A stretch of 64,000 nt of DNA from Cycas panzhihuaensis (lineage: Eukaryota; Plantae; Cycadophyta). Both the position numbers and the translations under genes were made by a program. Below are positions 10,342-64,000 of this stretch, one piece after another (position 1 is the first letter of the stretch; every line of letters begins with the position of its first letter). The stretch covers positions 160,091,741 to 160,155,740 of the forward strand of contig CM041465.1 in NCBI GenBank assembly GCA_023213395.1. Reading direction: 5' to 3'. The notes below the pieces were generated by a model. It was not told where the DNA came from. It did not search any database and was given only the letters and a program-made list of their open reading frames with translations.

Positions 10342-10366
10342 ATATATATATATATATATATATATA
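10342..10366. repeat. (TA)n microsatellite
   Basis: Direct TA run in the AT-rich leader of Copia 1. Confidence 0.9.
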
Positions 10367-11930: not shown

Positions 11931-11942
11931 GCTCTGATACCA
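11931..11942 (-). promoter_or_regulatory. Primer binding site (tRNA-iMet)
   Basis: GCTCTGATACCA on + reads TGGTATCAGAGC on -, directly abutting the 5' LTR. Confidence 0.95.
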
Positions 11943-17822: not shown

Positions 17823-17907
<85 letters not shown>

Positions 17908-33840: not shown

Positions 33841-33934
<94 letters not shown>

Positions 33935-35476
33935 TGGACTTAAGGGCTTATAGGAATTTACTTTCATCTTATGAAAAAAAGGTCTTCTTGATTGGTACTA
34001 TGACTATGAACACTTCCTTTTTTACTACAATGATGAACTTGACCTCACTTGCTTTGGGATGGATGATCACATTGATCCTTATGATTAGGTTATCACTTTA
34101 GAATAATTCTTTGAAGATTATTCTATAGTTTACTATCTCAAGCAGGAATATGCCAAGATCATGTTTACTATGTCATTCTTACAAGTAAATATTCATTGAA
34201 CAACTTGGGAATGGTATCTCTCACACCCAGATCTAGATTGGAAATCCTTTAGAATAGAACTTTAAAGGGAAATAAGAGCTTACCTAATTATTGAAGCTTC
34301 TACAAAAGAAGGTATATAAGACCAAGAATCTATCCAATTGGGAGAAAATGATGTGTTTCAAGATGAAATAATTTTATAGGACCATGATCACTCAAATGAC
34401 AAAAAAAGTAGGGAAACAAGGATTGAGCTACTTTATTTTAGTCTTGATGGTTCTATCATTTTTTATAATGAGCTTACATACATGCTTGCATACTTTAAAG
34501 ATCTCAACTTGATAGAATATTACAAGCTTTATTTAGGTATTCAACAATTAGAAGGTCCCCTTTAATTGTGGGCATGAGAGTGGTGCCAAAATACATATAA
34601 GCTAAATTGGAACCTCTTCTTTTTTATACTTTATTAATATATTGAAGCACTCATTCCTAACCAAAGCACTATTATAGAAGGAGAGGCCAAATAAGAAGAA
34701 GAAGGAAAAGAGGAAGTAAAAGAAGATGATAATGTAGGGGAAACCATGACTTTTCACTATGTTACATTTGAGGTAAATTTTTCTTTAGATCAATAGGTTG
34801 AAATCTCTCTATTTGAAGGTGTAAACATCAAATTAGCTCCATTAAAATTTGGGTTGTAAGAGCATTTAGGTTATCGTTTTTGTGGATTCATATACTACTA
34901 TACCACAGGCCCACATTTCTTTGGTTCTAATAATTAGACGAAGGAGTCTCTCTTTTTTGGACCACATCACCATCTATATAGACTTGTGCATCTTTTCTCA
35001 ATAACAAGATCTACAACAATAATATCTACTCATTGTCACCTTGCTAAAAACACTACTTATGACATACTAATAGTAACAGGTGGTGGGCATATATATTTTG
35101 TATTAGGATGCTTTGAGTATAAATCATTTGAGAGGAGAGGGAATGTAATGAACTTATACCACATATAATAGGTTAGAAGGCTAAGGGTTAAGAAGGATAA
35201 GTTAGAAGTAGTTAATAATAGTGAAAAAGTAGGATTGGATAGCTTAGCAATAGAATAATATAATAATGAGGTGATCCTCTTATAAATATGACACCCCCAT
35301 CTTATGTAAGGACACTAATATATTTATAAATATAATCTCATTGTATTCCTTTTGATCCCATTTTGGGTTTCATTGGGTGCCCTCCATCTTCACCCTTCAC
35401 TCCATTTGCCTCTATCTCTTGGTATTCTTCCCCTTTAATCTCATATTGTTATGATTATAGGGGTTGGATTATAACA
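31589..35476 (+). mobile_element. Non-autonomous Gypsy-derived LTR element with gag-like remnants
   Basis: LTRs 31589-31920 and 35144-35476. PBS TGGTATCAAAGC at 31923-31934. PPT GAGAGGAGAGGGAA at 35130-35143. Two gag-like patches near 34040-34260 and 34420-34640. No pol. No TSD visible. Confidence 0.88.
33836..33931. repeat. Compound A(n)-(TA)n-(GA)n microsatellite
   Basis: Direct inspection. Confidence 0.95.
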
Positions 35477-35608
35477 AAATACTCTGAGAAATGGACCCTA
35501 GGTCATAATAGGATGTGTAAACCTAAAAGAATGATCTATACCATTAATGTAAATTTAGAAGATGACTTAGATAATGATTATGAAAGGGACTAGCTAAGAA
35601 GTTGATGA

Positions 35609-44544: not shown

Positions 44545-47500
44545 TGTTAGGAAACATAAATATATAAATAGGATTAAGAATCATTTATGAATATAATAAA
44601 CTTGAAAAGAATCAATACATGGCACAAATAGATTTAACATAGGAACTTGGTTGGGAAAAACCCACCACAAAAATATTATTATCATATTTTTATAAATCTA
44701 TCATATTATATTGCAATGGACTTTGATCTATATTTATAGGTCATAAGTGCCTCTAATAATAATAATAATAATTAAATTTATATTTGTCAACCTAATATAA
44801 TAGATCAGCATTATCCATATAATATATCTATATTAATATTAGTTGGTAAGTGACATAAAGTCACTCTAACATCCCCTCTTAATGTAAATGTGGGGTCTTA
44901 AAGTCTTCTTAGACATTTATCTATCTTTATCCTTATTGATAGATTCTCTCTCAAGGATAACCTCATTGAACCCTAAATTTGCACAAATATTGATATAGCA
45001 ATCTTTAGTAAAAGCTTGGTGAACACATTCTTAAGTTGATTTTCACTTAGATAAAACTCAACCTATATCTTCCCTGATCTAATTTTCTCTCAAATGTAAT
45101 GGTTCTATGTGTCTTATGTGTATGATTCTTTTGAAATATCTCCAATAGTCCTTAAAACCATATAACTCTTTTACCTTGATACTTAGTCCATGAAACTCAT
45201 CTTATTTCCTTAACTAAACTAAGAAGTTGAGCCAATTGAACTATGTGAATCTCCTCTTTTGTTAAGGAATGCTGACATGATGTGACTCCTAATTATATCT
45301 AGCTACTAAAGTAAGGATTAATTAGACTATAAATAACATAGAGACTGGTGCAACTATCTTTTCATACCTGATTCTTTCTTCTTACTTGAAATCTTATATA
45401 ATAAGCTTTACCGACTTGAAAATCAACTAGGTTTTTTGAGGGAGTTAAGGGACCCAAATCCCATATAAATCACCCCTCCATAATTGTAGCTTTCCATTAT
45501 GAATATCGACTCATTAGAATCATTGGTGTCTATCACAAGTTTAGTTGGCATGTTGATCCTCATTCTTTAATCATCCTTTAGGTCTTCAACTGTTACACTG
45601 GAGTCCTTAATAGTCCTCCTAGCTTACAATGAAACACGAGGTTATAATCCATGCCTATTCTTATAATGACTTCTCATCATCACTCCCACTATGTCCTACT
45701 TCAATCTTAAATATAATGTTAGGAAATCAAACCTCTACACCTACTAAACCATGACTTAGAAAGAGAAGAAATAAAGGATAAAACCTATGTTTAGATGACA
45801 CCTCAGTATGATACATTATTAACTCTTCAACTTGATATCTGGACTAATGATAATGCTTTTCTCTGTAAATCATATAGTTTATAAGCTTTGTTTTAAACCC
45901 CATACAAATATACTTCAAATTCCTATAATTCTACTGCTATAATCTTCATCTAAGATGCATGCGCTCTAATGCACCTCAAATACATAATGGAAGCCTTTTG
46001 ACTAATCCAATACAATCTATGGAATATGCCATAAGCAACCTCAATAGGTACCTATTAAATAGTTATCACGATAACTTCTTCTATAAAACATGGAAGGCAA
46101 ACTTGTTTAATGCATTAAACACCTCCACATCTATATCATGGCACTATACTTCATTTGCAACATAATCTTACATGGGGTACATAGGACAACCACTCTCATT
46201 TATACCATGATAAAGGTAGAATTGATTTTAAAGTATCTCATTATAGACCTTTCTATTTATACTTTAATTTCATCATAACCATATAATTAAATCTATATTG
46301 GACCTAATCAAATATGTAAATATGTTGAACCGATAACTAATAAGCTATAAACCCTCAAACTAACATCAGTTCAACCATCTAAAGTATAATAGTCCACCAA
46401 CATTGATAACCATTTATACAAGCAAACTAATAAATAGAAATTCTAAACTCTTCGTCTCATACATATATGATGTAAAAAATCTTGATATAACTAAATAAAA
46501 CACCATTATATAGTGAATAAACCATATCTTTGAATAATATGTAGAATGATTTAGACCACTTCAATAAAGTTTGCTTTGCCTTATAGCGTAATATCATAAT
46601 AAAACTCACCCATTCTTACCCTCTTATCAATTAGCGATAATTCATTACCTTAATACCTCACCCATTATACTCTCTCATGTAAATACATGCTAGAAGAGCA
46701 TATAGTCACCTCATATTGCCAAATAGTCACCAATTAAGGGTGCCCAATATACTTACTTTGCCACATCTTAATGTCATCTCATATAACCATTCAAATTACC
46801 ATGACACATCACATAAAAACATGTATAATTCGTTTACTTTGACCTTATACCACTCTACTCAAATGCTAAAAAACAACGACTTGAAAATGTCATATCAAAA
46901 ACATAACTCAAGGGACAAGCTATTAATATTATCAAATAAGACTTTGATATATCCCAACAGGCATTAAAACATCTTCGATAAGATTAATACGGCTTTGAGA
47001 ATCAAAGTGCACCAAAATATTTTATAAAATAAAGGTGATCTTCTTTAATCAAAAGTGAGTGTAATAACTTTGATAAATATCAAATATCATTATGCAAGAT
47101 AAGTGACTTTATTGAAATAATATTTAATGTCAAATATGAAATATATCAAAATGGTGAAATGATATCATAAGGGTAACTTTGATTATTATCAAATGTCATT
47201 TAATATATGAAATAGTGGTGCAACTTTATAATATATACAAATATGAATTAATAAATATCAAAATAGATGATTAATATTAAAACTAATGATAATTAAATAA
47301 AGCATAAATCAAATTGTTGAGCATATAACTATACATAAATTAAGTTAGTGATTGATTAACTCATATCATTTGTGATAATATTTTAGTGACAATAAAATAA
47401 TATATAGGTGATATCAATATATTGTAGTAATTAATTATCAAAATAATTTAACATGATGTAACGCAACTACGTTAAATTATATGGATGAGGTAATATAATC

Positions 47501-48433
47501 CACGATAATTAATAATATATCATCATGCATTTAACCTAATAGTGAATAAAATATATTATCAATGACAAGCAATAAAATAATATTTTAATGTGGGAAATAA
47601 AATTTAGAGAATACCTTATTATTCACCATAAATAATCTGCGATGACCTACAATCATACCTCCATAGAGTGATGTCTCTTTGGTTAGCTCATCTTTGTGTG
47701 TATTCTCCATAGATTGTAATCTTCATATGGATCTTTTCTACTTTTAAGCTTTAAAACATAATCACCATGGCTCACAAGGGTAGATCTAGCATTAATAGTG
47801 GTACCAGGGGCTATAATAAGCTCATTAATAGCTTGTAAAGTATATGGTTTCACTACAGGAGGCACCAACACTTGTATAAACCAAAGTAATACCTTTCACT
47901 TATCTACACACCTTTACAAACTATAGAATCCTTGTAAAATAGAAAATAGAAGGCTATGAGATCTACACATGACCATCACACCTTTGTGGTTATTATTTTA
48001 GTTGTTAGATAAGTCGATCCTCAAAGGGTAAGCCAACATGACCTGGCAACTAATAATCGAATGATCTACCTAACATACACCTAATCGTGCACCTCCTCAT
48101 ACTTTAATACAATGTTAGGAAACATAAATATATAAATAGTATTTAAAATTATTTATGAACACAATAGACTCAAATAGAATTAGCACAGAGGATAGATAGA
48201 TTTGACATGGGAACCTATTTAGGAAAAATCCACCACAAAAATATTATTATCATACTTTTACAAATCTATTATATTACATTATAATGGATATTGATTTATA
48301 TTTATAGATCATAAGTGCCCCAAATAATAATATTCAGATTTATATTTGTCAACCTAATATAATACATCTATATTATTCACATAATATATCCATATTAACA
48401 TTAGTTTGTAAATGATATAAGGTCACTCTAACT
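44545..48433 (-). mobile_element. Internally deleted, decayed Copia element inserted into the integrase of another Copia
   Basis: LTRs 44545-44871 and 48113-48433. Degenerate PBS at 48101-48112. PPT at 44872-44880. RNase H end (NVFTKAF) near 45010 and integrase remnants at 45900-46250; no RT motifs seen. TSD TATTT/AATTC; its removal restores host RKMNKTLVE. Confidence 0.85.
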
Positions 48434-49487: not shown

Positions 49488-50328
49488 TTTTTCTATTGAG
49501 GTTGTTATTAAGGCTATTGTGGATGTTGTTATTAATGTCATTCTTAACAATCATTTTTTATGTGTCCTAACTTCCTACAAGGATAACATTTTGGTATATA
49601 TTATCCCTTTTAAGCTCCTAGTCCATCCTTTTAAACCATAAGTTTAGGAGGTATATTCTTCTTTAGAATATAGGGATTCCTTCCTTTTAATCTAGATGGT
49701 AGTGCTCTAGATGATTCATCATGTATATGCTTTAATTTCTACTCACATTCCATAAGTAATGATTCTAAAGAACTAATATCCAACATCAATAATTTATTAG
49801 ATAATATCAATGTGATGGAGAAGTTCTTATGCTAGAGTGATAAACTTCTTAGTATATAGCCTATGATCTCTAAATCAATTGCTAATATTTGGTCATGAAT
49901 CAACCTTATATTTCTATATAATCAATCATGTTGCTTATCATTTATAAACTATTTAGTTGACTCTATAGATTCATGGTTCTTATGTCATCCTTATATTTAT
50001 GTAGGTTCTTCACTATATCCCATATCTACTTTGGTGTAGTAGCACCCTTAATGTGCAAAATAATGATATCTTTATTGTACATGCTGAGAAAACCAAATGG
50101 TATTCATATTTTTTATTGGTATTAAATATTAAAGTTAGAATCAATATTTAATTTTGTTTGGAAAGTAGCAATTTCAACTATAATTTTTTCAATTATAGAA
50201 TTATCCATATACTTCTAAAGATCATTCAAATGAAATAAATTTAACATATGATACTTCTAAATAATATAATTATTAAGACATAATAACTTTTTAGTAATTG
50301 TAACTATTATGCTTCCTCCACTAGCCAT
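48434..50328 (-). pseudogene. Copia gag-PR-INT fragment (host of the 44545-48433 element; element A sits in its presumed leader)
   Basis: Starts MASGGS at 50328. Integrase reads GLVYSYIYG.VP...RYFITFTDSY..KIWVFL. Continues at 44513-44544 as KTLVENSKSM. Confidence 0.8.
49435..49486. repeat. (TAT)n microsatellite
   Basis: Direct inspection. Confidence 0.95.
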
Positions 50329-51029
50329 TTTGAGTAAAAAATATGTAAAATAATTAGAAAGAAATTAAATAAATACAAAAATAAAGTATAAAAATATAAA
50401 AGTAATCAATATACATGCAAGTAGCTAGATAGTTGATATTTTACTTCCTTAGTCTATTTTTAAGTAGCTAGAATAAGTTTTATTGGAGTTAATCATCATC
50501 ACTCCACTCCCACCTTTCCAACCAGGATTGTACACCTCATCAACCTTTAATTTAGACATGTGATACTCAACATGTCGAGGTAAGTTAAGGTAACTTTAAC
50601 TTTGAGTTAAGTTAGTTTCATTTGAGTTAAGTTAACATTATTTTATTATTATTTTAAATTCAGGAGTTGAGGAGTTTCACTCCTCCCCCAAATTATAAAT
50701 ATTGAGGGGTGTGCAACCCTAGTGTCTTTAGACACTACCCTCATTTGGGAAATTTATAATGCTCACTTCTCACAATGGATTGAATACAATGCTTTCATGT
50801 GTTTGTGCTATCATGCTACATTGATCTATTGATGATTTATGATTTGTATTGATCTATTGAAGATTATTCTATGTTCTGCCCTATTCTCCTATAAAAATAT
50901 TTTTCTAACATTTGGTATCAAAGCAGGCGATTGTTGATCTGTGAAGTTTTTTAAAAAAGTAAGAAGATTTTGAGACAGATTTACTCAAGGAAGCAAAATA
51001 CTAGTTATACTTATTTTTTGCATAAAAAT

Positions 51030-51780
51030 TTCAGCGATTTTCATATATTTTTCAGCAGATTTGCTTATTATTAAGATATATTTATGCTATAACAAGTATA
51101 TTTCAGATTTTTTCACAGATTTGTGTAGATTTATGAAGGATTTCAGTAGCAAGCCATATTTGCTCAAGTCCTTTTCTCAGATTTGAGTCATATTTCTTCA
51201 GTTCTACACATTTTATCTTATATTTCATCATTATTTCAGTAGCAAGTTATATATATTTAAATTTTTTCTTATATTTAAGTTATTCCTCTTCAGATCTATA
51301 GTTTTATCATATATTTGACAGTTTACAAGTAATTTTGTTGTCTACTTATTTGATATTTTTCGCAGATCTACAAAGAATATCAGTTGCATGCAAGCTTCAT
51401 ACTATTTTTTCTTCAAGATCTGTAATTTTACTTTAAGATCTACCATATTTTTCTTAGATCTGGAATATTTTACTTAGATCTACTTGTTTCATGAAGTATT
51501 ACAACATTTTCTAGTATAGTTATTTTAGATCTGTAACATTTACTTTATATCTGCCATAGTTTTTTTTAGATCTATTATATATTTTTCTAGATCTACTTAT
51601 TTTAATATTTTCTGGTATATTTATTACAGATCTACAACATTTAGTTTAGATCTGTTATATTTCATTTCAGATCTATATTTTTTCATCATATATTTGACCA
51701 TATTTTTAAGTCTTTTCACAGATCTGTAATTTTTGGGGCATATTCAGCCTTCTAGAGAAGCATATACAACAGATCTCATT
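51030..51780. repeat. Degenerate short tandem array built on AGATCT/AGATTT cores
   Basis: More than 15 irregularly spaced (T/C)AGATCT or AGATTT motifs downstream of the PBS of element A. Confidence 0.7.
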
Positions 51781-52141
51781 TCTACAAGCCAGCACTGTAA
51801 ACTAATTTACTAGGTTCTTCATGTGTTTTTTAAAATATAAATATATACATATATTTTATTTTGATGTATTTTTGTGGATATACTTAAAAATCTAGTTATT
51901 TTTATGGATATATTAAAAAATTTGGTTTGTTTAATACATTTGAGTAAGCAGGGTGAACATATATCTCATTTTATTTAGTTACAATTATATAGATATATTT
52001 CTTATTTATTTGTTATTACTTCCTTAATATATTTATAAGCTTTGGAATCATCTACTCTATTTATGCCCTCTTTGCATTCTCCGTTTGTGTGGTCTTCCAT
52101 TCGTGGCATCCCTTTATCCACGTAATCTTCTGTGTTAACTT

Positions 52142-52292
52142 GTTATGCTTACTTGCATACCTCTAATTCCTCAGTAACTTCGGGTCCATCCCTTTCATGG
52201 ATGTATATCAATGTTTTTTTTGGCATTTTGATGCCATTCTTGTGAGCCTTGTATGATTGATTATGTGTCGTGTAATACTGAGACTTTGCCAT
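52142..52292 (-). pseudogene. RPL29: Captured 60S ribosomal protein L29 coding sequence (near complete), antisense to element A
   Basis: [48 protein letters not shown], compared with the plant RPL29 pattern [24 protein letters not shown]...GMDPKFLRNQRYARKHN. One frameshift in an A-run and two stops. Confidence 0.93.
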
Positions 52293-52450
52293 CTCCCTGT
52301 CTCCACCGTTATAAATTCGTTATTTGAGATCTTTATGTGAAGAAGTTCAGGTTCCGTTGGATATTTTAAGCTTAACAAGTGGGTTCTTGAGCACCAAAGA
52401 TTTGACCTTTGGTCATCTCTATGTACTTGGGATGGTAATTATCAATTTGG

Positions 52451-52624
52451 AGTCTTGGAACTGTCTGCTTTATATTGCTCAATATACAACCGAATAGTTA
52501 CACCTTCGAATCCTATTCCAGAAAGTTAAAACGCCAATCAAGACCCATCTTCAAAAGGATAGTGTATACCTTAGTGTTTTGAAATAGATCCATCAATAGG
52601 ATCTGTACATTCAAACTCATCATC
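52451..52624 (-). pseudogene. PGM: Captured cytosolic phosphoglucomutase C-terminal fragment, antisense to element A
   Basis: [55 protein letters not shown], compared with [58 protein letters not shown]. Confidence 0.93.
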
Positions 52625-52877
52625 TTCTCCACTGTATTTCTTTATGTTAATAGAGCTGAGAGCCATCGTATTTCTTTGTTCTTTATTCTTTATTCTTCAT
52701 CTATTTCCAAAATTACTTGGCGCTAACCTCCTTAGTCTGCATATTTGCGGTACAACATATTAGTCTATGTTGAAGTAATTGATGGTGGTACAGTTTTTTT
52801 CTTTTATAAATTTTGGAGCTCTCTGTTCCTTGAGGGAGGTGATTTATTTAATTGATCATGGCTATTATTTGTATGCA

Positions 52878-53300
52878 ATGTTCCATAGCCTTCTATAGTG
52901 ATTTCTCATCATTTTTGGGTACTTGATGATAGCCATCGATGGTTACTACATGGGCATTTTTCTGATGTATGTCACATCTTAAATCCACATCCTTGTAAGG
53001 GTAATCCTCTTCATTGTCGATCCTGCCATTGTTCACGATGAACTAAAAAGCATAGTCCATTAGACCATCATCGTATCCTTCATTATACTTAGTATCACAA
53101 CTCACCAGCTCTTGCTTGGAAAGACTGATCAAATCCTTCGTCATAATTTGATTTATTCCCATCAACAATCGCTACAACTGAGAATGCTCAGCAGCTCCCG
53201 TAAGAGCCCTGATCCTTGACCTTGACTATTGCTCCTTTGTTCCTCCAATCCACAAACTCGGGCAACTGATCTCCTTATTTAAATAGAAATTTGGTGCTCG
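52878..53300 (-). pseudogene. Captured papain-family (C1A, RD21-like) cysteine protease fragment, antisense to element A
   Basis: [31 protein letters not shown]...[90 protein letters not shown]. Includes the catalytic QGSCGSCW region and has no intron. Confidence 0.95.
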
Positions 53301-53476
53301 ATCCATTTAGGAACAAAGAATTCTCTCTTTCATGTGCTTATGCCTGACGATGTTTGAGTTTCTTGGCCCTTCCCATGCTATTGTAGATGACTGCACGACC
53401 ACCATCTGAAAGGAGGGCTAATAAGAGGCAGCAATAGAAGTTTTTTATACTCTAATCTCAAACTCAGACTAGGAAC

Positions 53477-53539
53477 AAAAGGCTAGCATCTGCTCATATC
53501 TGCACTTCTAACTTTAGTGACATACTCACGAATCGAGAA
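53477..53539 (-). pseudogene. Captured fragment with the N-terminal FSIR..WPF motif of EMF1/EMF1-like proteins, antisense to element A
   Basis: FSIREYVTKVRSADMSRC*PF matches the FSIRxYxxxxRxxDxxxCWPF motif. The match is short. Confidence 0.65.
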
Positions 53540-53692
53540 ACTTTCACTGGTGAAATATAGACACTCGGTCTGAGAAGACATCAGCATATTTTTGACAGAA
53601 ATCAATATCTGCTTCAAGATTACATAAAGTTGTAGCCATAGATTATGTTCCCTATCTTATAACCACTGAAGAATGTTGTATTCTATATGAGT

Positions 53693-53863
53693 TAGATCTG
53701 CCAAGCTGCTATTAATTAGTTGTCAATATCGAAGTCTTTATCTTCTAACACCAACTGCACCTGCTGTTACTAGTACAACTTCAAAGCTAGCTGATATTAT
53801 TTCTTTCACCTTCTCATAAAGGGAGGTAAGACGACCCAGTGCAAGCCATCCATTAGCTCTGGT
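53693..53863 (-). pseudogene. P5CS: Captured delta-1-pyrroline-5-carboxylate synthase N-terminal fragment, antisense to element A
   Basis: TRANGWLALGRLTSLYEKVKEIISASFEVVLVTAGAVGVRR*RLRY*QLINSSLADL, compared with [57 protein letters not shown]. Confidence 0.92.
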
Positions 53864-54279
53864 TTTACACGTTTTTCATGTGTTCCTCTGTAAAGAATAG
53901 CCTAGATTTGCTCCAACGTCTATAAATAAATAAATAAAAAGGAGAAAAACCCATTTCTATCTCTGCATTTGTTCATTCCAATAGCATTCTCTTATTCACA
54001 TCTTCCACTAACTTTGCTTTCATTCAACATGTTCTTCTTCTGTGGCACATTGTTTCAGTAGTTTCTCCATCGTTGCAGCGTCGTACGAGGAATTTAATTC
54101 CGCACCCATCATTTTATTTTATTTTTATTTTCTTTTCCTTTTTGTATATATAAATATATACTTATTTCCTTTAATAAGAGCGGCTCGTCTGACTCATTGT
54201 AGATTCAAACCGATTCTTTTTTATTAAGTTTTTTGTTGTTTTTTGGCTGTTTGTTAGGCGATTTCGCCCTATCTTATTT

Positions 54280-55375
54280 TATTTTTAATTTTATAAAGTT
54301 TTTCAAATTTAAACCATATTGCATAAAATTTGAGATCTGAGGTTTATTAAATACATAAGCCCCCTTGAGCTTCTGCCACTGGTCACTTATATTCTCCATG
54401 TGACCATCGTCTATCTAAAGGGGCTTTATCACTTTTACAAACTTTTATTTTTTTTATTTATTTTTTATTTTTTATTTTTACATAGGATTACTAGAGAATT
54501 TTTACCATAACTCCTCACTGAGACATCAGTTTCTTACGAAACTAGTTTCATTGGATCAAAAATTTTTTGTAGATCAATTTTCACTGGTCATATGACTAAT
54601 TTGGTACTGATTTGACCCTGTTTCAGTCGATTTAAAGTCAATTAATCATTTTTTCAGCCTTTTTTAACCTTTTTATAAAATCACTTTTTAAACTGATTGT
54701 ATTTTATTACTAGGAACCTATTTTGTACCCATATTTATTTTAAAGTGATCTACGTTTAACAAACTTCATTATCCATTTTTTATTTTATTTTTTAGAATTC
54801 ATTTTGACCACTATTTTAATCATCGAAAGTGGCACTTTAGTGGTTTTTAACCTTTTTCTTAACATTTTACCACAATAGTACTAGTTACTATTTCTACTAT
54901 AACTTTTTTGTTTGACATCCAAATTTAGTTCTGTCAGTTTTGTTGAGAATTTGACTTAATTCTCTTCAATCTAATATAGTTTTTGATATATTTTAATGTA
55001 TTTTTTTTACTGATTTTTAAATTGCTCAAAGTAGAGGTACTTTATTACTTTAGACCTACCATATTTACATTTTTTTATATATAATTTTTTAATTTTTTTT
55101 AATTAAGAATACATTGAGCAGTCCTATAATGATATTTGATTGTTTTACAGTATTTTCTAAGTATTTTATTGCCATTTTTATACAATTTTGAGCCCCCTAC
55201 TCTTGTTGTGGCTCAAAACAAGGCCTATACCTTTGATTTATCAAATCTTATAGGAACCCGTTTTCAAAATGTTTAGTTCCGTTGGATTCATATTTTATTT
55301 ATCTTCATACTCATAAAATTTCATATCATTCTAATATCATTTAGTATATTTTTAAAGCTATCAAACTTAAGGTTG
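54280..55375 (+). repeat. Shared internal scaffold, colinear with the reverse complement of 60710-61900
   Basis: For example ACTGGTCATATGACTAATTTGGTACTGATTTGACCCTGTTTCAGTCGATTTAAAGTC versus ACTGGTCATGTGACCTATTTGGAGCTGATTTGACCCATTTTCAGTCAGTTTAAAGTC. Colinear anchors continue through to TAGGAACC(C/T)GTTTTCAAAA. Confidence 0.9.
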
Positions 55376-55775
55376 TCCTCTAACCCTTTTTTTAAAAAAT
55401 TTCTTTATACTCCTTATCTTTCAAAGTAAAATATACATATATTTCAGTTTTTTCAACATTATATATTATCATCAAGGCTAAGGATTTATTGCATTTAGAA
55501 TTTATATTTATTCATTTGAAGAAAATCAAAAGGTTAAGGATTATCCCTTTTATCATTAAAGTTACATTTCAGATTTGTATTGCTAAAAAGATCTTTATTA
55601 CATGCAAATTTACTTATATATCCATCATTTCCTTATTGTGCCTAGTTGATTGACTTTCTAAAGAGCATTACATCTACTTCAAAATCTTTATTTGAAATCA
55701 TATATATTCATTATATTTATTAACCTTCTTGACTTAGTAAATGCATACTTTCATACTAAAGTTTTTCTTGATAAA

Positions 55776-56260
55776 ATGGCATAATTTTCCATTTTCAATA
55801 GCCATAACTTTTCACTATGGTATAACACTATGCACGACTATTTTATTGAACATGATCTTATAAAATATTTACAATGTGAATGTGATCTCAGTATTAAAAA
55901 AAAAATTAGAAAGAACAATAAAATTTTAGGATTATTCTTTTGTACTATTCATGATGATATATTTTCAAAGGTTTCTGAATTAACAACTTCTAAATTTGTT
56001 TGGGATACATTAATTTCTACTTATGGGGGAGATACTCTCCATGTATTTGATAATATTTTTGATGAGCATGTGAGATAGGTGACAGAACAAGTGGATGATG
56101 ATGACAAAACTAATGAAGATTCAGATCAAATGTAGGACCAACTTGCTACACAAGGATTTGATCCTCCATTTGAGCGGGAGAATGAAAATGAATCCTGTGA
56201 CATGATGGAGAATGAATATGATATGACAAAAAATAAATCTTATGATATGAAAGTTATTGA
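55776..56260 (+). pseudogene. Truncated Copia gag N-terminus with an acidic tail (element A)
   Basis: FNSHNFSLWYNTMHDYF...KNNKILGLFFCTIHDDIFSKVSELTTSKFVWDTL aligns with gag of element B (KDNKALALIFCALKDHVFQRVSELVKSKESWDTL). Confidence 0.85.
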
Positions 56261-56949
56261 TAGGAATGCTATTATTTTGAATTCAGGGGTTGAGGAGTTT
56301 CCCTCCTCCCCCAAATTATAAATATTGAGGGGTGTGCAACCCTGGTGTCTTTAGACACTACCCTCATTTAGGAAATTTGTAATGCTCACTTCTCACAATG
56401 GATTGAATACAATGCTTTCATGTGTTTATACTATCATGCTATATTGATCTATTGATGATTTATGATTTGTATTGATCTATTGAAGATTATTCTATGTTTT
56501 GCCCTATTCTTCTATAAATATATTTTTCCAACAAGTTTAAGAATATAAAATTTTAATTTTTTTTCAAAATTTTACATAAAAGTATTACATGTGACTACTT
56601 TTAGATTATAGATCTAAAAAAAATAGACATTATGGTATATTAACATATCTAAAATAGATTTTAAATTATCCAAAAATACCCCTAATACCTTGTAAACCAC
56701 ATGAGTAGGGATTGATAGGTTGAGAGCTTTGTCACAAACTCTATTTTTTTATCAAATATGACTTAATATATCCCTATCTTTGTAAAAGTTAAAAAATACA
56801 TTTATTAAAGTTTTTAATAAAATATTCTCTCAAAATATTCCCTCCAAGATCTTAAGTAGCACTTGACCTCCTCAAAAATTAAATTTTCCTCCAAAATTAG
56901 AGGCATTTCTTCAATAAATCACATTATTATTATCAATGATATCGTATGC

Positions 56950-57809
56950 TAAAGTCAATACATGTTATTACATATGAAAATGTTTAAGAACATTCCAAGG
57001 TTTAGGGCACAAGAGCATCTGATCTTATAGAGAAGTCAATGTGAAAGCCACAATTGCATGATTAAGAAAGAAAAGGTTAAGGGCAATTATTATTTTATGT
57101 GCACTAGTTATATATCTCTACCAATGGGATTAGAGTGCCCATAGTCCACCAATAGGATGCTAGTATTAATGACCATTTTTGCTTATATAAGTCTAAGCAA
57201 TTGTAAAAGTAACACTCATGCTATATTATTATCTTTTGAGAGTATACAAGAGTACATCTTATCTTTAGTGATCATTAAGCTTCCATGTGCACCTTTAATA
57301 TAATTTTGCTATTGAATCATTAATAGAGATCTATTGAGATTCTAGTTTCTTTAAAAATTATTCTTTTGTATGTAACCTCTAGTTCATATCATAGCAAGTG
57401 GTATTGGAGACAAGCTTGATAATGCTATGGAGTAGTTAGAAGCTAGAAAAGGGATTTTTTTCCCCCTTGGTGACTCTCATATCTTCTATCTTTTAGTTTT
57501 AATTTTTATTAAAGGGTAGACAACACTACTTGGTGGCTATCTTTTCCATTCCCTCCTATTGCCCCCTTAGTTCTTGGGTAGATCACTCTACATGGCAACT
57601 ACCTGCCATAGGTAAAGACCCTATCATAGGGGTCTTTAAACATCATGAAGGATATGTCATTCTTATCTAAGTGCATTGTGGCTTTTCTACCCTTACATGA
57701 AGGACTTTAGTTGACTCCATTGAATCAAGCCTTAGATATAACTTATATATGGAATTAAGCCTTAAATGATCTCTTTTAGGATTCTCCTTCCTTACTTAGA
57801 ATAGGTAAA
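56950..57809 (+). mobile_element. Remnant LTR, PBS and leader related to 28830-29800; interrupted by element B
   Basis: CATAGCA-AG-TGGTATTGGAG near 57390-57410; leader motifs shared with 29420-29555. Confidence 0.5.
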
Positions 57810-58164
57810 TGATGGATTTAGAGGAGCAAAGTAGGACTTTAGATCGAGTACATTTTGAGAAAATAGGTGATTTCTGATTATTGGTGGTGTTAAAAAACAC
57901 CAGGGAGGTATTCCCACCCTTTAAATAGAGTTTTTGGGGAGGCGACAAGTGCCATCACCCTACCTGCATGTTAGCTAATGTATAATTCAAAATATATTAA
58001 AAAAAATAACAATAATAAATAAAAGCACATACCTTAATAAAATGGTGTAAGCTCTTGGTGGCTATTAGGGGGCTCAAGGTGCCCTAGGGGCCCTCAAAGG
58101 TGGCTTTGAGGGGCCCTAGGTGCACAATTTTTTAATAACATTAGGATTATTCCTAATATTCTCC

Positions 58165-58570
58165 CCCATAAGCCCAATGTGTACGACTCCCAATTTGTCT
58201 CTAAACTTCTCAAATTTGATCTTTCCCAAAGCCTTTATAAAAATATCTGTTGCTTGATTTTCGGTGCTATAATAAGTTAACTCTATCTCATCTACTTGTA
58301 CAAGTTCTCGTATAAAGTGGTGTTGAGTCTCAATATAATTTCTTCTACCATGGAACATTAGATTTTTGGCCATTTGGATAGTGCTTTGATTGTCACACTA
58401 AATTCTAGTGGGACCTTGTTGTTTAATCTAAAAATCCTGTAAGAGTCTTCTTAGCCATATTGATTCATAAGCTCTTAAAACTGTAGCTCTATACTCTGCC
58501 TTAGTTGTGGATAAGGAAACAGTATTTTGCTTCTTTGTACTCCAAGCTACTATTATTGATTCCATACTGA
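58165..58570 (-). pseudogene. Copia RNase H C-terminal remnant
   Basis: WSTKKQNTVSLSTTKAEYRA..IWLRRLL..DNQSTI.MAKN.MFHGRRNYIET.HHFIRELV..QATDIFIKAL. Confidence 0.9.
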
Positions 58571-58812
58571 TGATTCTCAACTTGTCTCTATTGATTAGGA
58601 TTTCTTAGAGGATCTTCATGTTGTTGGGATCCTCCTTGCCTCTTTTGGTGAGTGGCTTGATATTGTAGAGAGTCTTATTTAGTTTCCTTTATAGGATTTC
58701 CATCTTTTCTCCTTGGAGGAGATTCCTTTTATCTTAAGGTTCCTGCTTGGGAGTTAGATTGAATGCAAGCCTTTGTAGCAAAGATATGTTCTAAAGATTT
58801 ATTTGTATTTTG

Positions 58813-59403
58813 CTACTCTTCTATAGACATAAGCATAGTACTAAGTTGTTCTACTTTGAGGGTACTTAGATCCTTTGATATACTAATACTAGTAGTTACC
58901 ATTTCATAATGTCGTACAACTCCTACACATCTAAGGATCCTCTCAACTACCCTTTGTTCGATTAGGATATCTCTAACTGACCTCATTTGGTTAACAATAT
59001 CTTGGACTTTGGCCATGAATTCAGTTATTGATTCATGAGGCATCATATGTAAATTTTTAAACTTACTTCTCAAGTTTTGTAGTTTAGAGGAGGTAACTCC
59101 TTCATATATTAGTTGTAAAGTGTCCCAAGATTCTTTGGACTTAACTAATTCACTAACTCTTTGAAACACATGATCTTTTAAAGCACAAAAAATAAGAGCT
59201 AAGGCTTTGTTATCCTTTTTGACATTTTCCTTGTCTATAATTTTTTTTGGATCATACAGATTTGGTCCTAATTCATTGTAATCAGTTCGCACAATGTCCC
59301 ACATGTTGTTAGGTATAAGGATGGTTCTCATCCTTCTACTCCAGTTTAGAAAATTATTTCCATCAAAATTTGGGATAATTATGTTCCCAAAACTAGACAT
59401 CAT
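58813..59403 (-). CDS. Copia gag (UBN2-type), 196-aa open frame, probably truncated
   Basis: FDGNNFLNWSRRMRTIL..MWDIV...KALALI...SWDTL...KLQNLRSKFKNLHMMPHESITEF..IVNQMRS...VVERILR...KDLSTLKVEQL...L.SIE. Confidence 0.85.
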   Translation of the reverse strand: MMSSFGNIIIPNFDGNNFLNWSRRMRTILIPNNMWDIVRTDYNELGPNLYDPKKIIDKENVKKDNKALALIFCALKDHVFQRVSELVKSKESWDTLQLIYEGVTSSKLQNLRSKFKNLHMMPHESITEFMAKVQDIVNQMRSVRDILIEQRVVERILRCVGVVRHYEMVTTSISISKDLSTLKVEQLSTMLMSIEE

Positions 59404-60709
59404 TTTGAACTAAAATTATGTTGATTAAATGTGACAAATAAGATTTTAAAAGTTAAATGTAAATATAAAACATATTTGAATTAAAATTTAAAAAAGGTTC
59501 CAATGTAAAAATTTACTTCCAAATATAACCCAAGGTTTTTTTCAAAGTTTTGAATAAGTAAACTAGGGCCTATTAAGGCTACTAGGCTCTAAGTTTAAGT
59601 TTCTCTTGGGGTAACCTTCAATTATTATCATGTTTAGTGGTGCCTTCCCACAGATGGTAGAACAGGGACCCAATATACTGGTACGTGAGCACTAGGCTCT
59701 ATATACCTCAATACGTGGGCTGCTATAAAGGTTTTTACATCCCCCTAAATTGTTGGTCCAGTTGTGCCAGACTTATACTTGGCAACAAATATAGCGATGA
59801 AGGTTCCTGAACTAAGGCACTCACCCTCTAGGTCTAGCCTTGGTCTCCAAACACCATAAAAGGAACATGTTCTACACCTCAATCTACCACCGAATACACC
59901 TGATAGCTAATAGTTGTCCTCATCCAATATGAGTAGGTCGATTAGCATGTGTGGGGTGGTAACTTTAGGGGTCCTAACCATTCCCCTTGCAAGGCTAGAA
60001 AAATAGTGTGGTTCAATTCAGGATTATCTTATTTAATGTAAAAAAATAGATTAATTAGCAATGTGGTCTTGCTTAGAAAAAAAAGGATTCCTTTTATATA
60101 ATAAAGAAAAACTTGAAAATAGAATAATAATCTCTAAGCAAGATGAAATAAATATTAAACTTTTTCAAAGAAATAAGACACTGAAATATTTTTTCAAAAA
60201 GAAAAAATGCAATGCTTCTTTAAATGAATGAAAAAAGCCTTTGAAAATTAAATAAACAAAATGTAACTTTTATAAGTGCAAGAAAGAAATGATATTTTTC
60301 AACAATGATGAATAAAAAATAAGAAAAAAACTTTCAATAAGTGAATGCCTTTTAAATAAATGACAAACTTATAGGATATAATTTCAGATAAACTTTGAAA
60401 TACAAGGAAATTTTAAATATAACTAAGATCCTCTTTAATTATGCAAGACTGAATTAAAACTTTGATGATGAAAAATAAAAAATTCTTAACCTTTCGATTT
60501 TTAAAATAAATAAATATAAACTTTTTAATGTAAGAAATCATTTGTCTTGAAGAAGATATATAATGCTGAAAACTGAAATATATATGTATATTTTACTTTT
60601 AGAAAAATAAAGAAGAAACTTCAAAAAAAAAAAATTATACCTATTTAAGTTGCAAGTCCAATTGACTTATCACTTGTTTTATGATCAATTTCTATTAGGA
60701 TATCCTGAA

Positions 60710-61900
60710 AGCTCAAGTTTAGTAGCTTCAAACTTGTACCAAATGATGTCAGAATAAAGTGAAATTATACCAATATGGAGATCAACAAAAGATTTATTTA
60801 ATGAAATTGATTGTTTTGAAAACAGGTTCCTACAAGTCAATATTTTAATGAATAAAATATACAGTCCTCTTTTTGAGGCCTAACGGGAGCCTAGGGCTCA
60901 AAATATTATAAAAATACTAGTAAAAATTTATAGAATACTGTAAAATAATCAATTATAGTTTGGAAGGTTACTCAATGTACTTTTTAATTGAAAACTTTGA
61001 GAAATAATATATAAAAAATGTGTAATTATGGTAGATTAGAGGCTATTAAGTACCTCAAATTTGATGGTTTTGAAAATCTAAAAAAATACTTCAAAACTTA
61101 TAAATAATAGTGTTAGTTTGAAAAGCAGTGAGTCATGTTCCCAACGAAACTGGCAAATTTGAATTCAGATGTAAAGCAAAAAAAGTTATAATGAAAATGG
61201 CAACAAGTACTTTTATGGTAAAATGTTTAAAAAGTGTTAAAGTGTCACTTTCATCAATTAAAATTATGATTAAAATAAATCTTAAAAAATAAAATGAATA
61301 GATAATAATAAAGTTTGTTGACAATAGATGGCTACAAAATAGATTTAGGTAGAAAATAATCACCCGGTAATAAAATATAATCTAATGAAAAATGGATGTT
61401 ATGAAAATAGTTTAAAATGGTTTTAAAAATAAATGACCGACTTTAAACTGACTGAAAATGGGTCAAATCAGCTCCAAATAGGTCACATGACCAGTCAAAA
61501 TTGCACCATAGAAAATTCTAGATGTAATGGGATAAGTTTTGGCAAAAATTGATGACTTAATCAAGAGTTATAGCTAAAAAAATCAAGTGCCTTATGTTAA
61601 AAAAAAATTAAAAATAAAAGGTAAAATGTTATATCCTTAAAATAACCCTCTTAGAATATCAACCTGAGGGTAGATTGGGTAGGGATTGAACCCAAGACCT
61701 ATCAAAAGATAAACCCCTCTAATGCCAAGAGGGTGAACTCACTCGTCAAGTTTAAAAAATAATAAACTTAAAAAATAAGGCCCCTTTTAGTAATGAGCTA
61801 AAAGACACGTGGAAGAGACACACACCCAGGGACTAAACGCCAAAAGCTTAGATCTCAAAAATTATTTAATTTAATTTAATTTTTAAAACTTTATAAAAAA
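60710..61900 (-). repeat. Shared internal scaffold of element B (homologous to 54280-55375)
   Basis: Colinear reverse-complement similarity to element A. Confidence 0.9.
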
Positions 61901-62198
61901 GTGTATATGGGTAAAAATTATCATCACGATCGTATAGATACAAATGAGGTACACTACAAATATAATTAAAATCGAAAAAGACTAAAGAAAAAAAATGGAA
62001 TCATCAATCTTAGTAGGCACACTTAAAAAATACATAGATATATACTATGGATGAAAAAATAAAAAAATAAAAAAAAAGGATTTGAGTGATTTCGCTCCTT
62101 CACCTTCATCGTTGGAATTCCTACAAGTAAAAGAGAATCGGGGAACATTAGACGAATGTGTGACAATAGTGCTAGTCCCAAACGATAAAACAGGGGGT

Positions 62199-62320
62199 AA
62201 GACTAATATTTATACAGATGGCTTAGACGACCGAGAGCATAGAACATATCTATGGTTCAATCCCACTGTTTACGTCTACACGTATTCTATATTCTTGAAT
62301 CTTTACCACATTGTGTAAGT
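62199..62320 (+). pseudogene. XTH: Captured xyloglucan endotransglucosylase/hydrolase (GH16) exon fragment ending in a GT|GTAAGT donor, antisense to element B
   Basis: KTNIYTDGLDDREHRTYLWFNPTVYVYTYSIFLNLYHIV, compared with QTNVY.NG..DREQR.YLWFDPT.DFHTYSILWN.HQIV. Similarity stops at GTAAGT (62315-62320). Confidence 0.9.
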
Positions 62321-62349
62321 TTATTAGCCTTTATTATTTGAGAGAAGCA

Positions 62350-62520
62350 ATGGTGATCGCTCAGTTGGGCAAGGGCGTTAGTTTCAGGTCATACGAGGGT
62401 CTTAGGCTAGTCCCAGTTAGCAGATCTTCCACTAAACCTTCCACCATTGGCTCAAGATGCTTTCCCTATACAAGTTTAGCGGTGAGGACAACAACCATAG
62501 TGGCTCCAAAATTCACATCA
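62350..62520 (+). pseudogene. CPN20: Captured chloroplast chaperonin 20 N-terminus (transit peptide), antisense to element B
   Basis: MVIAQL...FRSYEGLR......SLAVRTTTIVAPKFTS, compared with CPN20 MAATQL...SLDGLR...RLVVKAASVVAPKYTS. Preceded by 5'UTR-like GAGAGAAGCA. Confidence 0.75.
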
Positions 62521-62968
62521 AGAGCATCAAATAAAGGACTCAAGGGAGGGGAATGAGATTCCACTGATGGGAGAAACAACATGTAGGGGAGCAATGGGAT
62601 ACCACTAATGAGCATTAAACTTAGCCAATGAAAAGATTTTATAGGGTCAGAGAAAGAATGGGATGGCACAAGAGCAGCAAAACAAATAAATCTAGTCCAA
62701 GCCTCGATGCCCAAGTGACTAGAATGAGTGTTGATGATGCTGATAACAAGTAAGACAAGGTAGATACTTCAATCTTAGAGGATAGAAATGAAACCATGGA
62801 AATGATTACAAACTTTGATTAGACTAGTACACAAAGAAATGTTGAAAGATACTGTCAGAACTAAAACATATCAAAATGTGATTTATTAAAATACCTTCCT
62901 CTTTAAGGATAAAATTGTGCTCAATGTTGGAGCTTAAACAGCAATATTAGCTCTTTTTTGTGCAAAGG

Positions 62969-63135
62969 GATTACGTAAAGTTCTACGAAGCATTCTCGAA
63001 GAAAATTAAGTTAGGCATTCACGAGGACAACCAGAACATGGCTAAGTTAGCAGATTTGCTGAGATATTACTCTACCAAGAGTGGAGACTAGATGATAAGC
63101 TTGAAGGATTATGTGATGAAAGATGGAGATGGGGC
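62969..63135 (+). pseudogene. HSP90: Captured cytosolic HSP90 middle-domain fragment, antisense to element B
   Basis: [48 protein letters not shown], compared with [49 protein letters not shown]. Confidence 0.96.
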
Positions 63136-63339
63136 ATAACAACAAAGAACTCTCCCTTCTACCAATATTTAATTTATATGATGGTGGCTTTTATAATCAA
63201 ATGCTTTATATAAAAAAGTAAGCATAATAATGTGATATAATCTTATTAAAATAACTTGGATAATAGCATGCAGGGGGAGCAACAAGATTACAGGCCTATG
63301 GAAGCAAGGGATAACCCAAATCTATATGAGTATAGGCCT

Positions 63340-63515
63340 TTCAATAGGATCTATGTTTAGCCTGATCACACAAATACATCAAATAAACTATATTTTTAAA
63401 TATATTTATGAAAATACATCAAATAAATAAAATATATGTATATATTTGTATTTGAAAAAAAAAAACACGAAGAACCTGGTAAACTGTGACAGGTTTGCAG
63501 TGCTAACTTCTGAGT
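63340..63515 (-). repeat. Upstream shared scaffold block of element B (homologous to 51775-51970)
   Basis: AGCACTG(T/C)AAAC...TTTAC(T/C)AGGTTCTTC(A/G)TGT...AAATATATACATATATTTT...TTTGATGTATTTT occurs in both elements. Confidence 0.88.
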
Positions 63516-64000
63516 GAGAGAACGTCTTTCACAATGGATGAAACTCCAAACCGTCTTCTCCAGTGAATAGGTGAGCTTACTAGGATCTTAACTAGCAGTC
63601 ATATGCAGTTATTTTACTATATGTATGAGAAGCTAGATCAGTATGATCAAATATCAAACACTTCTTTGGCTTTAATACCAAATGATGGATTTAGAGGAGT
63701 AGAGTAGGACTTTAGATCGAGTGAATTTTGAGAAAACAAGTGATTTCTAATTGTTGGCAATGTTAAAAAACACTAGGGAGGTATTCCCACCCTTTAAATA
63801 GAGTTTTTGGGGAGGCGGTAAGTGCCATCACCCTACCTACACATTAGTTGACATATAATTCAAAATATATTAAAAAATATAACAACAATAAATGAAAACG
63901 CGTACCTTAATATAGTGGTGTCAGCTCTTGGTGGCTATTCAGAGGCTTAAGGTGCCCTAAGGGCCCTCAAAGGTGGCTTTGAAGGGCCCTAGGCACACAG

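What the first reader, a model, noticed from the sequence alone, without database searches (positions are those of the whole stretch)
52142..63135. All eight identifiable captured fragments are antisense to their retroelement
Seen: PBS/PPT and gag set A on + and B on -. All five A fragments are on - and all three B fragments are on +. If orientation were random and independent, the chance of 8 of 8 antisense is 1/256. Fragments in one element may not be independent, and I may have missed sense-strand pieces. Established: simple RT template switching between genomic RNA and mRNA during minus-strand synthesis yields sense-oriented captures. Inference: the options are a different mechanism, selection against sense pieces in the leader (upstream AUGs, splice or polyA signals), or a function in which the element transcript is an antisense/siRNA source against host genes.
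Basis: partly seen in the sequence, partly recalled or inferred. Interest (0 to 1): 0.85.

Follow-up and report, generated by a model that had tools for sequence, protein, structure and literature searches.

The report
Backwards host-gene pieces in two retrotransposons
Two old, defective plant copia-type retrotransposons each carry a chain of decayed host mRNA pieces that lies backwards to the element; this is real and unusual, but it amounts to two capture events, not eight, and nothing shows a function.

Summary
The observation largely holds. Element A (50644-56533, + strand) and element B (57810 to the window end, - strand) are non-autonomous Ty1/copia-type LTR elements. PBS and gag fix the strand of both, and a PPT does so in B.

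Seven host-gene pieces have tool support, and all are antisense to their element:
- A: RPL29, phosphoglucomutase, papain-type protease, P5CS.

None of 30 sense-strand pieces matched any family convincingly.

The 1/256 figure does not hold. Each element carries one head-to-tail chain of intron-less mRNA pieces. Two pieces keep the mRNA 5' end (P5CS possibly too), as a template-jumping reverse transcriptase would leave them. Pieces in a chain are therefore co-oriented by construction, so there are two events (chance 1/4).

Both chains sit at the same place in a 1.6-kb leader scaffold shared by otherwise unrelated elements. The native leader avoids ATG and AATAAA on the element strand, and flipping the cargo would about double its ATGs. 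That fits a filter against sense cargo.

No RNA data could be obtained, so the siRNA idea is untested. Other unchecked notes of this scan report mostly antisense cargo, and some sense cargo, elsewhere in this genome.

Verdict: a new variant of LTR-mediated retroposition.

The parts
50644..50910 (+). Element A 5' LTR, ending in CA
   Evidence: Direct repeat with 56270-56533, 95% identical. The 13 differences are 11 transitions and 2 transversions.
50913..50924 (+). Element A primer-binding site TGGTATCAAAGC (tRNA-iMet type)
   Evidence: Pattern search. It lies 2 nt after the LTR end.
51425..51674 (+). About 20-nt tandem repeats in A's leader, absent from B
   Evidence: TRF.
51783..51979 (+). 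Scaffold, upstream part (A), homologous to B 63497-63339
   Evidence: blastn 77-81%; alignment.
52100..52319 (-). RPL29 piece: 5'UTR, start codon and nearly the whole coding region
   Evidence: Pfam Ribosomal_L29e, 1.2e-9, with profile position 1 two residues after an in-frame Met. The rest is read by eye.
52340..52696 (-). Phosphoglucomutase C-terminal piece, running to the stop codon and a short 3'UTR
   Evidence: Pfam PGM1_C: 0.048 (profile 44-66) and 3.9e-5 (profile 83-107). PDB 0.001, residues 502-525 of 560. DNA spacing matches profile spacing, so no intron. The stop codon and 3'UTR are read by eye.
52896..53274 (-). Papain-family cysteine protease piece, mature domain positions 1-127; probably runs on to about 52763
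   Evidence: Three collinear Pfam Peptidase_C1 matches (8.8e-5, 8.3e-7, 1.4e-6). 379 nt cover 127 profile positions, so no intron.
53341..53451 (-). Unidentified piece, possibly B-lectin-like
   Evidence: PDB lectin at E = 1.1 only; no Pfam match. Not established.
53490..53975 (-). P5CS N-terminal piece; tool-supported core at 53741-53863
   Evidence: PDB Arabidopsis P5CS A and B, 1.8e-5, residues 37-77. The extension in both directions, including a possible mRNA 5' end, is read by eye.
54289..55640 (+). Scaffold, downstream part (A), homologous to B 61898-60380
   Evidence: blastn 71-76% over 1.3 kb; alignment. Element-strand ATG 6 against 18 expected; AATAAA 0 against 16 on the other strand.
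55785..56075 (+). Element A copia gag remnant
   Evidence: Pfam Retrotran_gag_2, 3.1e-6. 35% amino-acid identity to B gag.
56267..56533 (+). Element A 3' LTR
57810..58139 (-). Element B 3' LTR, preceded by the PPT GGGGGAGAA
   Evidence: Direct repeat with 63680-63999, 88% identical. The PPT is read from the sequence.
58131..58604 (-). Element B copia RNase H C-terminal remnant; protease, integrase and RT are deleted
   Evidence: Translation, read by eye. No Pfam match.
58816..59409 (-). Element B gag
   Evidence: Pfam Retrotran_gag_2, 1.9e-24.
59540..60020 (.). GC-richer block (41%) between scaffold and gag of B, unidentified
   Evidence: GC scan. No Pfam match on either strand and no Rfam match.
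60380..61898 (-). Scaffold, downstream part (B)
62175..62315 (+). XTH (GH16) piece; a GTAAGT follows its last matching codon
   Evidence: Pfam Glyco_hydro_16, 2.2e-4, profile 78-122. Sequence.
62340..62715 (+). Putative CPN20 piece (5'UTR, Met, transit peptide, start of Cpn10 domain); unconfirmed
   Evidence: Resemblance by eye only. No hit.
62827..62967 (+).
   Evidence: PDB PRMT8/1/3, E 0.009-0.08 across 14 chains, residues about 23-42. The continuation is read by eye.
62966..63136 (+). HSP90 middle-domain piece, abutting the PRMT piece with no spacer
   Evidence: Pfam HSP90, 7.6e-14, profile 226-266. Junction sequence.
63339..63497 (-). Scaffold, upstream part (B)
63669..63680 (-). Element B primer-binding site TGGTATTAAAGC
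63683..64000 (-). Element B 5' LTR, cut by the window end

Best explanation
A and B are old, non-autonomous Ty1/copia-type LTR retrotransposons of a plant. Each carries one chain of decayed pieces of processed host mRNAs, at the same position in a shared leader scaffold.

The pieces in a chain are head-to-tail and co-oriented because a reverse transcriptase made the chain by jumping from one mRNA to the next, often on reaching an mRNA 5' end. The eight pieces are therefore two orientation events.

The chains lie antisense because the cDNA strand became part of the element's plus strand. That could happen by plus-strand DNA synthesis jumping onto co-packaged mRNAs, or by insertion of free cDNA into element DNA. 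Sense-oriented chains are then lost. They would load a leader that is otherwise kept poor in AUG and AAUAAA with AUG-rich sequence that carries poly(A) signals, and so would block production of full-length genomic RNA.

Shown here: the anatomy, the strands, the intron-less collinear pieces, and the strand asymmetry of the leader. Inferred: template jumping, the way the cDNA entered, and the filter. No present function is implied.
For: - Element strands are fixed by PBS and gag, plus a PPT in B.
- Seven pieces have tool support, all antisense. No sense-strand piece matched.
- Pieces are collinear and intron-less. Peptidase_C1 profile 1-127 fits in 379 nt. PGM profile spacing equals its DNA spacing.
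- RPL29 begins with 5'UTR plus Met. By eye, CPN20 does too, and P5CS possibly. PRMT and HSP90 abut with no spacer.
- The native leader is strand-constrained. Element-strand ATG counts are 6 against 18 expected in A's scaffold and 5 against 24 in B's. AATAAA counts are 0-1 against 13-16 on the other strand.
- The cargo as it lies has 34 and 23 ATGs, which is what its composition predicts. Flipped, it would have 65 and 41.
- The PGM and RPL29 pieces appear to include 3'UTR (read by eye), which would carry poly(A) signals if sense.
- Multi-gene chains made by LTR-element RT template switching are published (PMC5131818).
Against: - There are only two chains here, so antisense in both has a 1 in 4 chance under no bias.
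- The cargo still puts 34 and 23 ATGs and 3 AATAAA on the element strand, so any filter is weak for these motifs. Much of the AATAAA asymmetry follows from the T-rich base composition.
- Non-autonomous elements do not need gag translation.
- No parent genes were available. Splicing, junction microhomology and 3'UTR content are therefore inferred, not measured.
- The XTH piece may run into an intron (GTAAGT after its last codon).
- How the same slot came to hold different cargo in two elements with unrelated LTRs is not explained.
Confidence: 0.5

Rival explanations
1. Mechanism alone sets the orientation. Cargo is taken up only during plus-strand DNA synthesis after the second strand transfer. 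The growing plus strand leaves the minus-strand DNA in the leader, copies co-packaged mRNAs, and returns. Every such capture is then antisense and lies after the PBS, and no filter is needed.
For: The cargo lies in the leader downstream of the PBS in both elements. The mRNA 5' ends (RPL29; by eye CPN20 and possibly P5CS) point downstream in the element's sense, as synthesis along the plus strand predicts. Unchecked scan notes describe post-PBS antisense cassettes in several families of this genome.
Against: The cargo starts 300 nt (B) and 1070 nt (A) after the PBS, not next to it. A plus-strand-only insert leaves a large heteroduplex loop that must survive repair. I found no published precedent. 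Scan notes also list sense-strand mosaics, which this model forbids unless a second route exists.
Confidence: 0.22
2. Chance. Two chains went in by an orientation-blind route, and both happened to be antisense.
For: Effective sample size is 2, so p = 0.25. The other LTR elements in the window (C, F) show no identifiable cargo that would enlarge the sample.
Against: Many other notes of this scan on the same genome report antisense cargo in copia leaders, two of them followed up. These are unchecked leads and were retrieved partly with the word 'antisense'. The leader's strand asymmetry gives a reason to expect a bias.
Confidence: 0.13
3. Scaffold plus cargo is a separate mobile unit, or a module passed between families, that lies on the opposite strand. 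The cargo is sense relative to that unit, and 'antisense to the LTR element' only records how the module sits.
For: The scaffold is 71-76% identical over 1.6 kb between A and B. Their LTRs are unrelated (z 0.6), and their gag proteins share only 35% identity. The scaffold's antisense strand is A-rich with many AATAAA.
Against: No terminal inverted repeats, poly(A) tail, target-site duplication or Helitron ends mark the module ends. The only inverted repeat found is an AT-rich near-palindrome present twice. The scaffold has no coding capacity on either strand. Intron-less cargo argues against Pack-MULE or Helitron-type DNA capture. No free-standing copy occurs in the window.
Confidence: 0.08
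4. Function. The element transcript serves as an antisense or siRNA source against the parental host genes, or as a shield that makes silencing the element costly to the host.
For: Antisense cargo in an LTR-driven transcript would pair with host mRNAs. In maize, TE-captured gene fragments act as siRNA sources in conflict with their donor genes (Muyle et al. 2021, as summarised in PMC13317346).
Against: The pieces are riddled with stops and frameshifts. The LTRs are 5% and 12% diverged, so long perfect matches to the parent genes are unlikely now. The cargo is a mix of abundant housekeeping mRNAs, as passive sampling predicts. No expression or small-RNA data could be obtained.
Confidence: 0.05

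Closest known systems
LTR-mediated retroposition by RT template switching (Derr et al. 1991 in yeast Ty1; Tan et al. 2016, PMC5131818)
   Same: Intron-less pieces of host mRNAs sit inside an LTR element with both LTRs kept. Several parental genes can be joined in one chain. The chimera can behave as a non-autonomous element.
   Different: The published model switches during minus-strand synthesis and gives sense-oriented retrocopies that are co-transcribed in sense. Here every supported piece is antisense. The chains hold four or more genes. Two elements with unrelated LTRs use the same leader position.
Maize Bs1 (Jin and Bennetzen 1994; Elrouby and Bureau 2010, as cited in PMC7264820)
   Same: A non-autonomous plant LTR retrotransposon carrying spliced pieces of several host genes.
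   Different: Bs1 cargo is sense and forms a chimeric ORF with gag. Here the cargo is antisense, lies in the leader and is decayed.
TR-GAG / non-autonomous copia derivatives
   Same: LTRs, a tRNA-iMet PBS, gag retained, and most or all of pol lost.
   Different: A 4-kb leader with a scaffold and a host-gene mosaic is not part of that definition.
Pack-MULE / Pack-CACTA / Helitron gene capture
   Same: Mosaics of fragments from unlinked host genes inside a non-autonomous element. They can be small-RNA sources.
   Different: Those capture genomic DNA with introns and have TIRs or Helitron ends. Here the pieces are intron-less and the carrier is an LTR element. No TIRs were found.
Antisense bias of retroelement insertions inside genes
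   Same: A transcription unit tolerates inserted sequence better when that sequence's processing signals point the other way.
   Different: The roles are reversed here. The retroelement is the transcription unit and the host mRNA pieces are the inserts.

Membership tests
Ty1/copia LTR retrotransposon (non-autonomous) | Pair of direct long terminal repeats | tested here: met
   A 95% identical and B 88% identical.
Ty1/copia LTR retrotransposon (non-autonomous) | PBS complementary to the tRNA-iMet 3' end, next to the 5' LTR | tested here: met
   TGGTATCAAAGC in A and TGGTATTAAAGC in B, each 2 nt after the LTR's terminal CA.
Ty1/copia LTR retrotransposon (non-autonomous) | Copia-type gag on the same strand as the PBS | tested here: met
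   Retrotran_gag_2: 3e-6 in A (+) and 2e-24 in B (-).
Ty1/copia LTR retrotransposon (non-autonomous) | Polypurine tract before the 3' LTR, and a 5-bp target-site duplication | tested here: inconclusive
   B has GGGGGAGAA before its LTR. A has only GATAGGAA. A's flanks are TATTT and AGTTT (3 of 5 match). B's outer flank lies beyond the window.
LTR-mediated retroposition (template-switch capture of mRNA) | Host-derived, intron-less sequence between the two LTRs | tested here: met
   Collinear Pfam and PDB matches with no room for introns in Peptidase_C1 and PGM. The parent genes' intron positions were not available.
LTR-mediated retroposition (template-switch capture of mRNA) | [quoted passage not shown] | tested here: not met
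   All 7 supported pieces are antisense.
LTR-mediated retroposition (template-switch capture of mRNA) | Microsimilarity between mRNA and element at the junctions | not testable with these tools
   No parent-gene DNA from this genome is at hand.
Pack-type DNA transposon or Helitron capture | Terminal inverted repeats with TSD, or 5'-TC...CTRR-3' ends with a hairpin; genomic fragments with introns | tested here: not met
   No TIRs at the module ends, only an AT-rich palindrome present twice. The pieces are intron-less.
LINE-made chimeric processed pseudogene | Poly(A) tail and target-site duplication flanking the insert | tested here: not met
   No poly(A) or poly(T) run at either cargo border. 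A LINE with RT is present in the window, so the enzyme source exists.

The most novel reading that the evidence does not exclude
Copia-type elements of this genome have a regular route that loads co-packaged host mRNAs, as antisense cDNA chains, into one defined leader slot. The likely route is plus-strand DNA synthesis. The resulting antisense libraries against abundant housekeeping genes affect silencing, either of the host genes or of the element itself.
Probability: 0.1. Interest if true: 0.85.

Novelty: new variant of a known kind. Interest (0 to 1): 0.5.

Why it matters
The accepted model for gene capture by LTR retrotransposons is template switching during minus-strand synthesis, which predicts sense cargo, and a review says so explicitly (PMC7264820). 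The 2026 review and the gymnosperm survey I checked never discuss orientation.

If a per-event census of this genome confirms an antisense majority, one of two things follows. Either there is an undescribed capture route, with cDNA entering the plus strand. Or there is a strong replicative filter on what a retrotransposon leader may contain. Both can be tested with this genome alone.

It also bears on whether TE-borne gene pieces start out as ready-made antisense RNA against their donor genes.

From this window alone the evidence is two events.

Tried and rejected
- **Reads and RNA:** No read laying, expression, strand or small-RNA evidence exists here.
- **CPN20:** no match in PDB, Pfam, the Atlas or 1.8 billion representatives. 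It remains a resemblance by eye.
- **Fifth piece in A:** only a lectin match at E = 1.1. The pieces at 53310-53417 and 54023-54118 gave chance-level PDB hits.
- **More cargo in the window:** the leaders of copia C and element F gave no Pfam match on either strand, so the sample could not be enlarged.
- **Module as a DNA transposon:** no TIRs and no coding capacity.
- **tRNA or SINE and Rfam scan of 50000-64000:** nothing above threshold.
- **LTR_A against LTR_B:** no similarity.
- **Literature:** no description of an antisense bias was found. One search failed on term length.
- **Handling of broken pieces:** all broken pieces were searched separately by reference.
Full report
**Anatomy**

The window is AT-rich (26-42% GC) and packed with retroelements. 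Two direct-repeat pairs bound the region of the finding: 50647-50910 with 56270-56533 (95%), and 57807-58126 with 63680-63999 (88%). The differences are mostly transitions, 11:2 and 33:5.

Element A reads on the + strand. Its LTR ends in CA, followed by TT and then the tRNA-iMet-type primer-binding site TGGTATCAAAGC at 50913. A copia gag remnant lies at 55785-56075 on + (Retrotran_gag_2, 3e-6).

Element B reads on the - strand. Its PBS is at 63680-63669 and its gag at 58816-59409 (2e-24). An RNase H tail and the purine tract GGGGGAGAA precede the 3' LTR (read). Protease, integrase and RT are missing. Its 5' LTR is cut by the window end.

Both are non-autonomous Ty1/copia derivatives. The host is a plant: the cargo includes XTH and P5CS.

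**Scaffold and slot**

blastn of A and B against the whole window finds only one shared part apart from each element's own LTR pair. A 51783-51979 matches B 63497-63339, and A 54289-55640 matches B 61898-60380. Identity is 71-81%, and in each element the shared part lies in the element's own sense (alignments).

Between these two scaffold parts lie 2.3 kb in A and 1.4 kb in B with no similarity to each other. The LTRs of A and B are unrelated (z 0.6), and the gag proteins share only 35% identity. A leader module is therefore shared by otherwise distant elements, and it holds different cargo at the same position.

**The cargo and its strand**

I translated both cargo blocks in six frames. Stop-free pieces were searched one by one, by reference.

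Supported pieces on the antisense strand of A (window - strand):

| Piece | Evidence |
|---|---|
| RPL29e | Pfam 1.2e-9; the profile starts two residues after an in-frame Met, with 5'UTR upstream |
| Phosphoglucomutase C-terminus | Two collinear pieces: Pfam 0.048 and 3.9e-5; PDB 0.001, residues 502-525 of 560 |
| Papain-family protease | Three collinear pieces covering profile 1-127 in 379 nt |
| P5CS | PDB 1.8e-5, residues 37-77 |

Supported pieces on the antisense strand of B (window + strand):

| Piece | Evidence |
|---|---|
| GH16/XTH | Pfam 2.2e-4 |
| HSP90 | Pfam 7.6e-14 |

It rests on resemblance by eye only. A fifth piece in A has at best a lectin-like match at E = 1.1.

On the sense strands, 30 pieces gave nothing better than E = 0.027, which is chance level.

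The observation therefore stands for 7 pieces, or 8 with the by-eye CPN20. I found no missed sense pieces. Stretches that are UTR-like or too decayed cannot be assigned to a strand.

**Why eight is really two**

Within each element the pieces lie head-to-tail with little or no spacer:
- PRMT and HSP90 abut.
- By eye, about 80 nt separate what looks like the PGM stop codon from the RPL29 start codon.

The pieces are intron-less wherever this can be judged (Peptidase_C1 and PGM). RPL29, by eye CPN20 and possibly P5CS, begin at the mRNA 5' end.

This is what a reverse transcriptase leaves when it runs to the end of one mRNA and jumps to the next. Such chains are published for LTR-element RT (PMC5131818). 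Pieces in such a chain share their orientation by construction.

The independent events in this window are the two chains, so chance is 1/4, not 1/256. The other LTR elements in the window (C, E, F, G, D) gave no identifiable cargo and do not enlarge the sample.

**Why antisense**

Spliced pieces prove that sense mRNA was the template. The cDNA strand must therefore have become the element's plus strand.

The published minus-strand switching model gives sense cargo (PMC5131818), and a review states that transduced sequences usually share the sense of gag-pol (PMC7264820). Antisense cargo needs another entry route. Either plus-strand synthesis jumped onto mRNAs, or free cDNA was inserted into element DNA. 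I cannot tell these apart here.

The window does show a strand constraint on the native leader:

| Region | ATG, element strand (expected) | ATG, other strand | AATAAA, element strand / other |
|---|---|---|---|
| A scaffold, downstream part | 6 (18) | 38 | 0 / 16 |
| B scaffold, downstream part | 5 (24) | 40 | 1 / 13 |
| A cargo | 34 (36) | 65 | 3 / 10 |
| B cargo | 23 (22) | 41 | 3 / 4 |

Expected values are calculated from base composition. The cargo as it lies matches its composition; turned round, it would carry the counts in the "other strand" column. By eye, the PGM and RPL29 pieces include 3'UTR, which would bring poly(A) signals if sense.

A filter that removes sense cargo, because it blocks full-length genomic RNA, is thus the explanation with the most support in this window. 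The support is still modest. Much of the AATAAA skew follows from the T-rich composition, and the cargo still adds many ATGs.

**Rivals**

- A purely mechanistic bias (plus-strand capture only) fits the post-PBS position. It is contradicted by scan notes of sense mosaics.
- Chance cannot be excluded from two events.
- A separate module on the opposite strand would explain a scaffold shared between unrelated elements. It has no termini, tail or coding capacity.
- A present antisense or siRNA function is unlikely given the decay of the pieces.

**Context from the scan**

This scan has noted the same kind of thing many times elsewhere in this genome. Most notes report antisense cargo in copia leaders, and two of those were followed up. 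Some report sense mosaics. These are unchecked notes, retrieved partly with the word 'antisense'. I use them as leads only.

**Literature**

A 2026 review of plant gene capture and a 2026 gymnosperm survey never mention orientation. I found no description of an antisense bias.

**Verdict**

This is a real and tidy example of an unusual variant of LTR-mediated retroposition. Its statistical weight was overstated and its function is unsupported. It becomes interesting if a per-event genome census confirms the bias.

Noticed in passing
window 51783-51979 + 54289-55640 (A); 63497-63339 + 61898-60380 (B): A 1.6-kb non-coding leader scaffold is 71-81% identical between two elements whose LTRs are unrelated and whose gag proteins share only 35% identity. 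The module seems to move between copia lineages, or to be far better conserved than the rest.
   Followed up: partly
window 54289-55640 and 60380-61898: The native leader shows strong strand asymmetry. On the element strand ATG is 3- to 5-fold below the composition expectation and AATAAA is almost absent. The other strand has an excess of both.
   Followed up: yes
window 1-4600 (+): A non-LTR (LINE) retrotransposon with RVT_1, zf-RVT and RNase H domains. It is interrupted or followed at 4778 by copia element C, and is a second possible source of reverse transcriptase.
   Followed up: partly
window 4778-12387 (-): Copia element C with integrase and RT (gag by eye), 90-96% identical LTRs, and an unusually long 2.4-kb leader. 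The leader has GC-richer blocks at 10600-11800 that match no Pfam family on either strand.
   Followed up: partly
window 31589-35477 (+), 35608-40757 (-), 16890-20301 (+), 44545-48432: Four more small LTR-bounded elements (3.3-5 kb). Three have tRNA-iMet-type PBSs. E has copia gag and RT. The window is a nest of short, decayed copia derivatives.
   Followed up: partly
window 61640-61760: A tRNA-like or SINE-like stretch (GGGTTCAATCCC on the - strand) sits inside B's scaffold and is absent from A. ARAGORN and Rfam did not call it.
   Followed up: partly
window 59540-60020: A 41% GC block between B's scaffold and gag, with no protein or RNA family match on either strand. It could be further, unrecognisable cargo.
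   Followed up: partly
window 62309-62345: The XTH piece is followed at once by GTAAGT. It may run from an exon into an intron, that is, come from unspliced RNA, unlike the other pieces.
   Followed up: no
window 51831-51858 and 63389-63416: An AT-rich near-palindrome is conserved in the upstream scaffold of both elements, just before the cargo, and a related copy lies about 1.1 kb beyond the cargo. It could be a pause or break site, or mere low complexity.
   Followed up: partly
window 17700-17990 and 33850-33930: Long (CA/TG)n and (GA)n microsatellites lie inside elements G and F.
   Followed up: no
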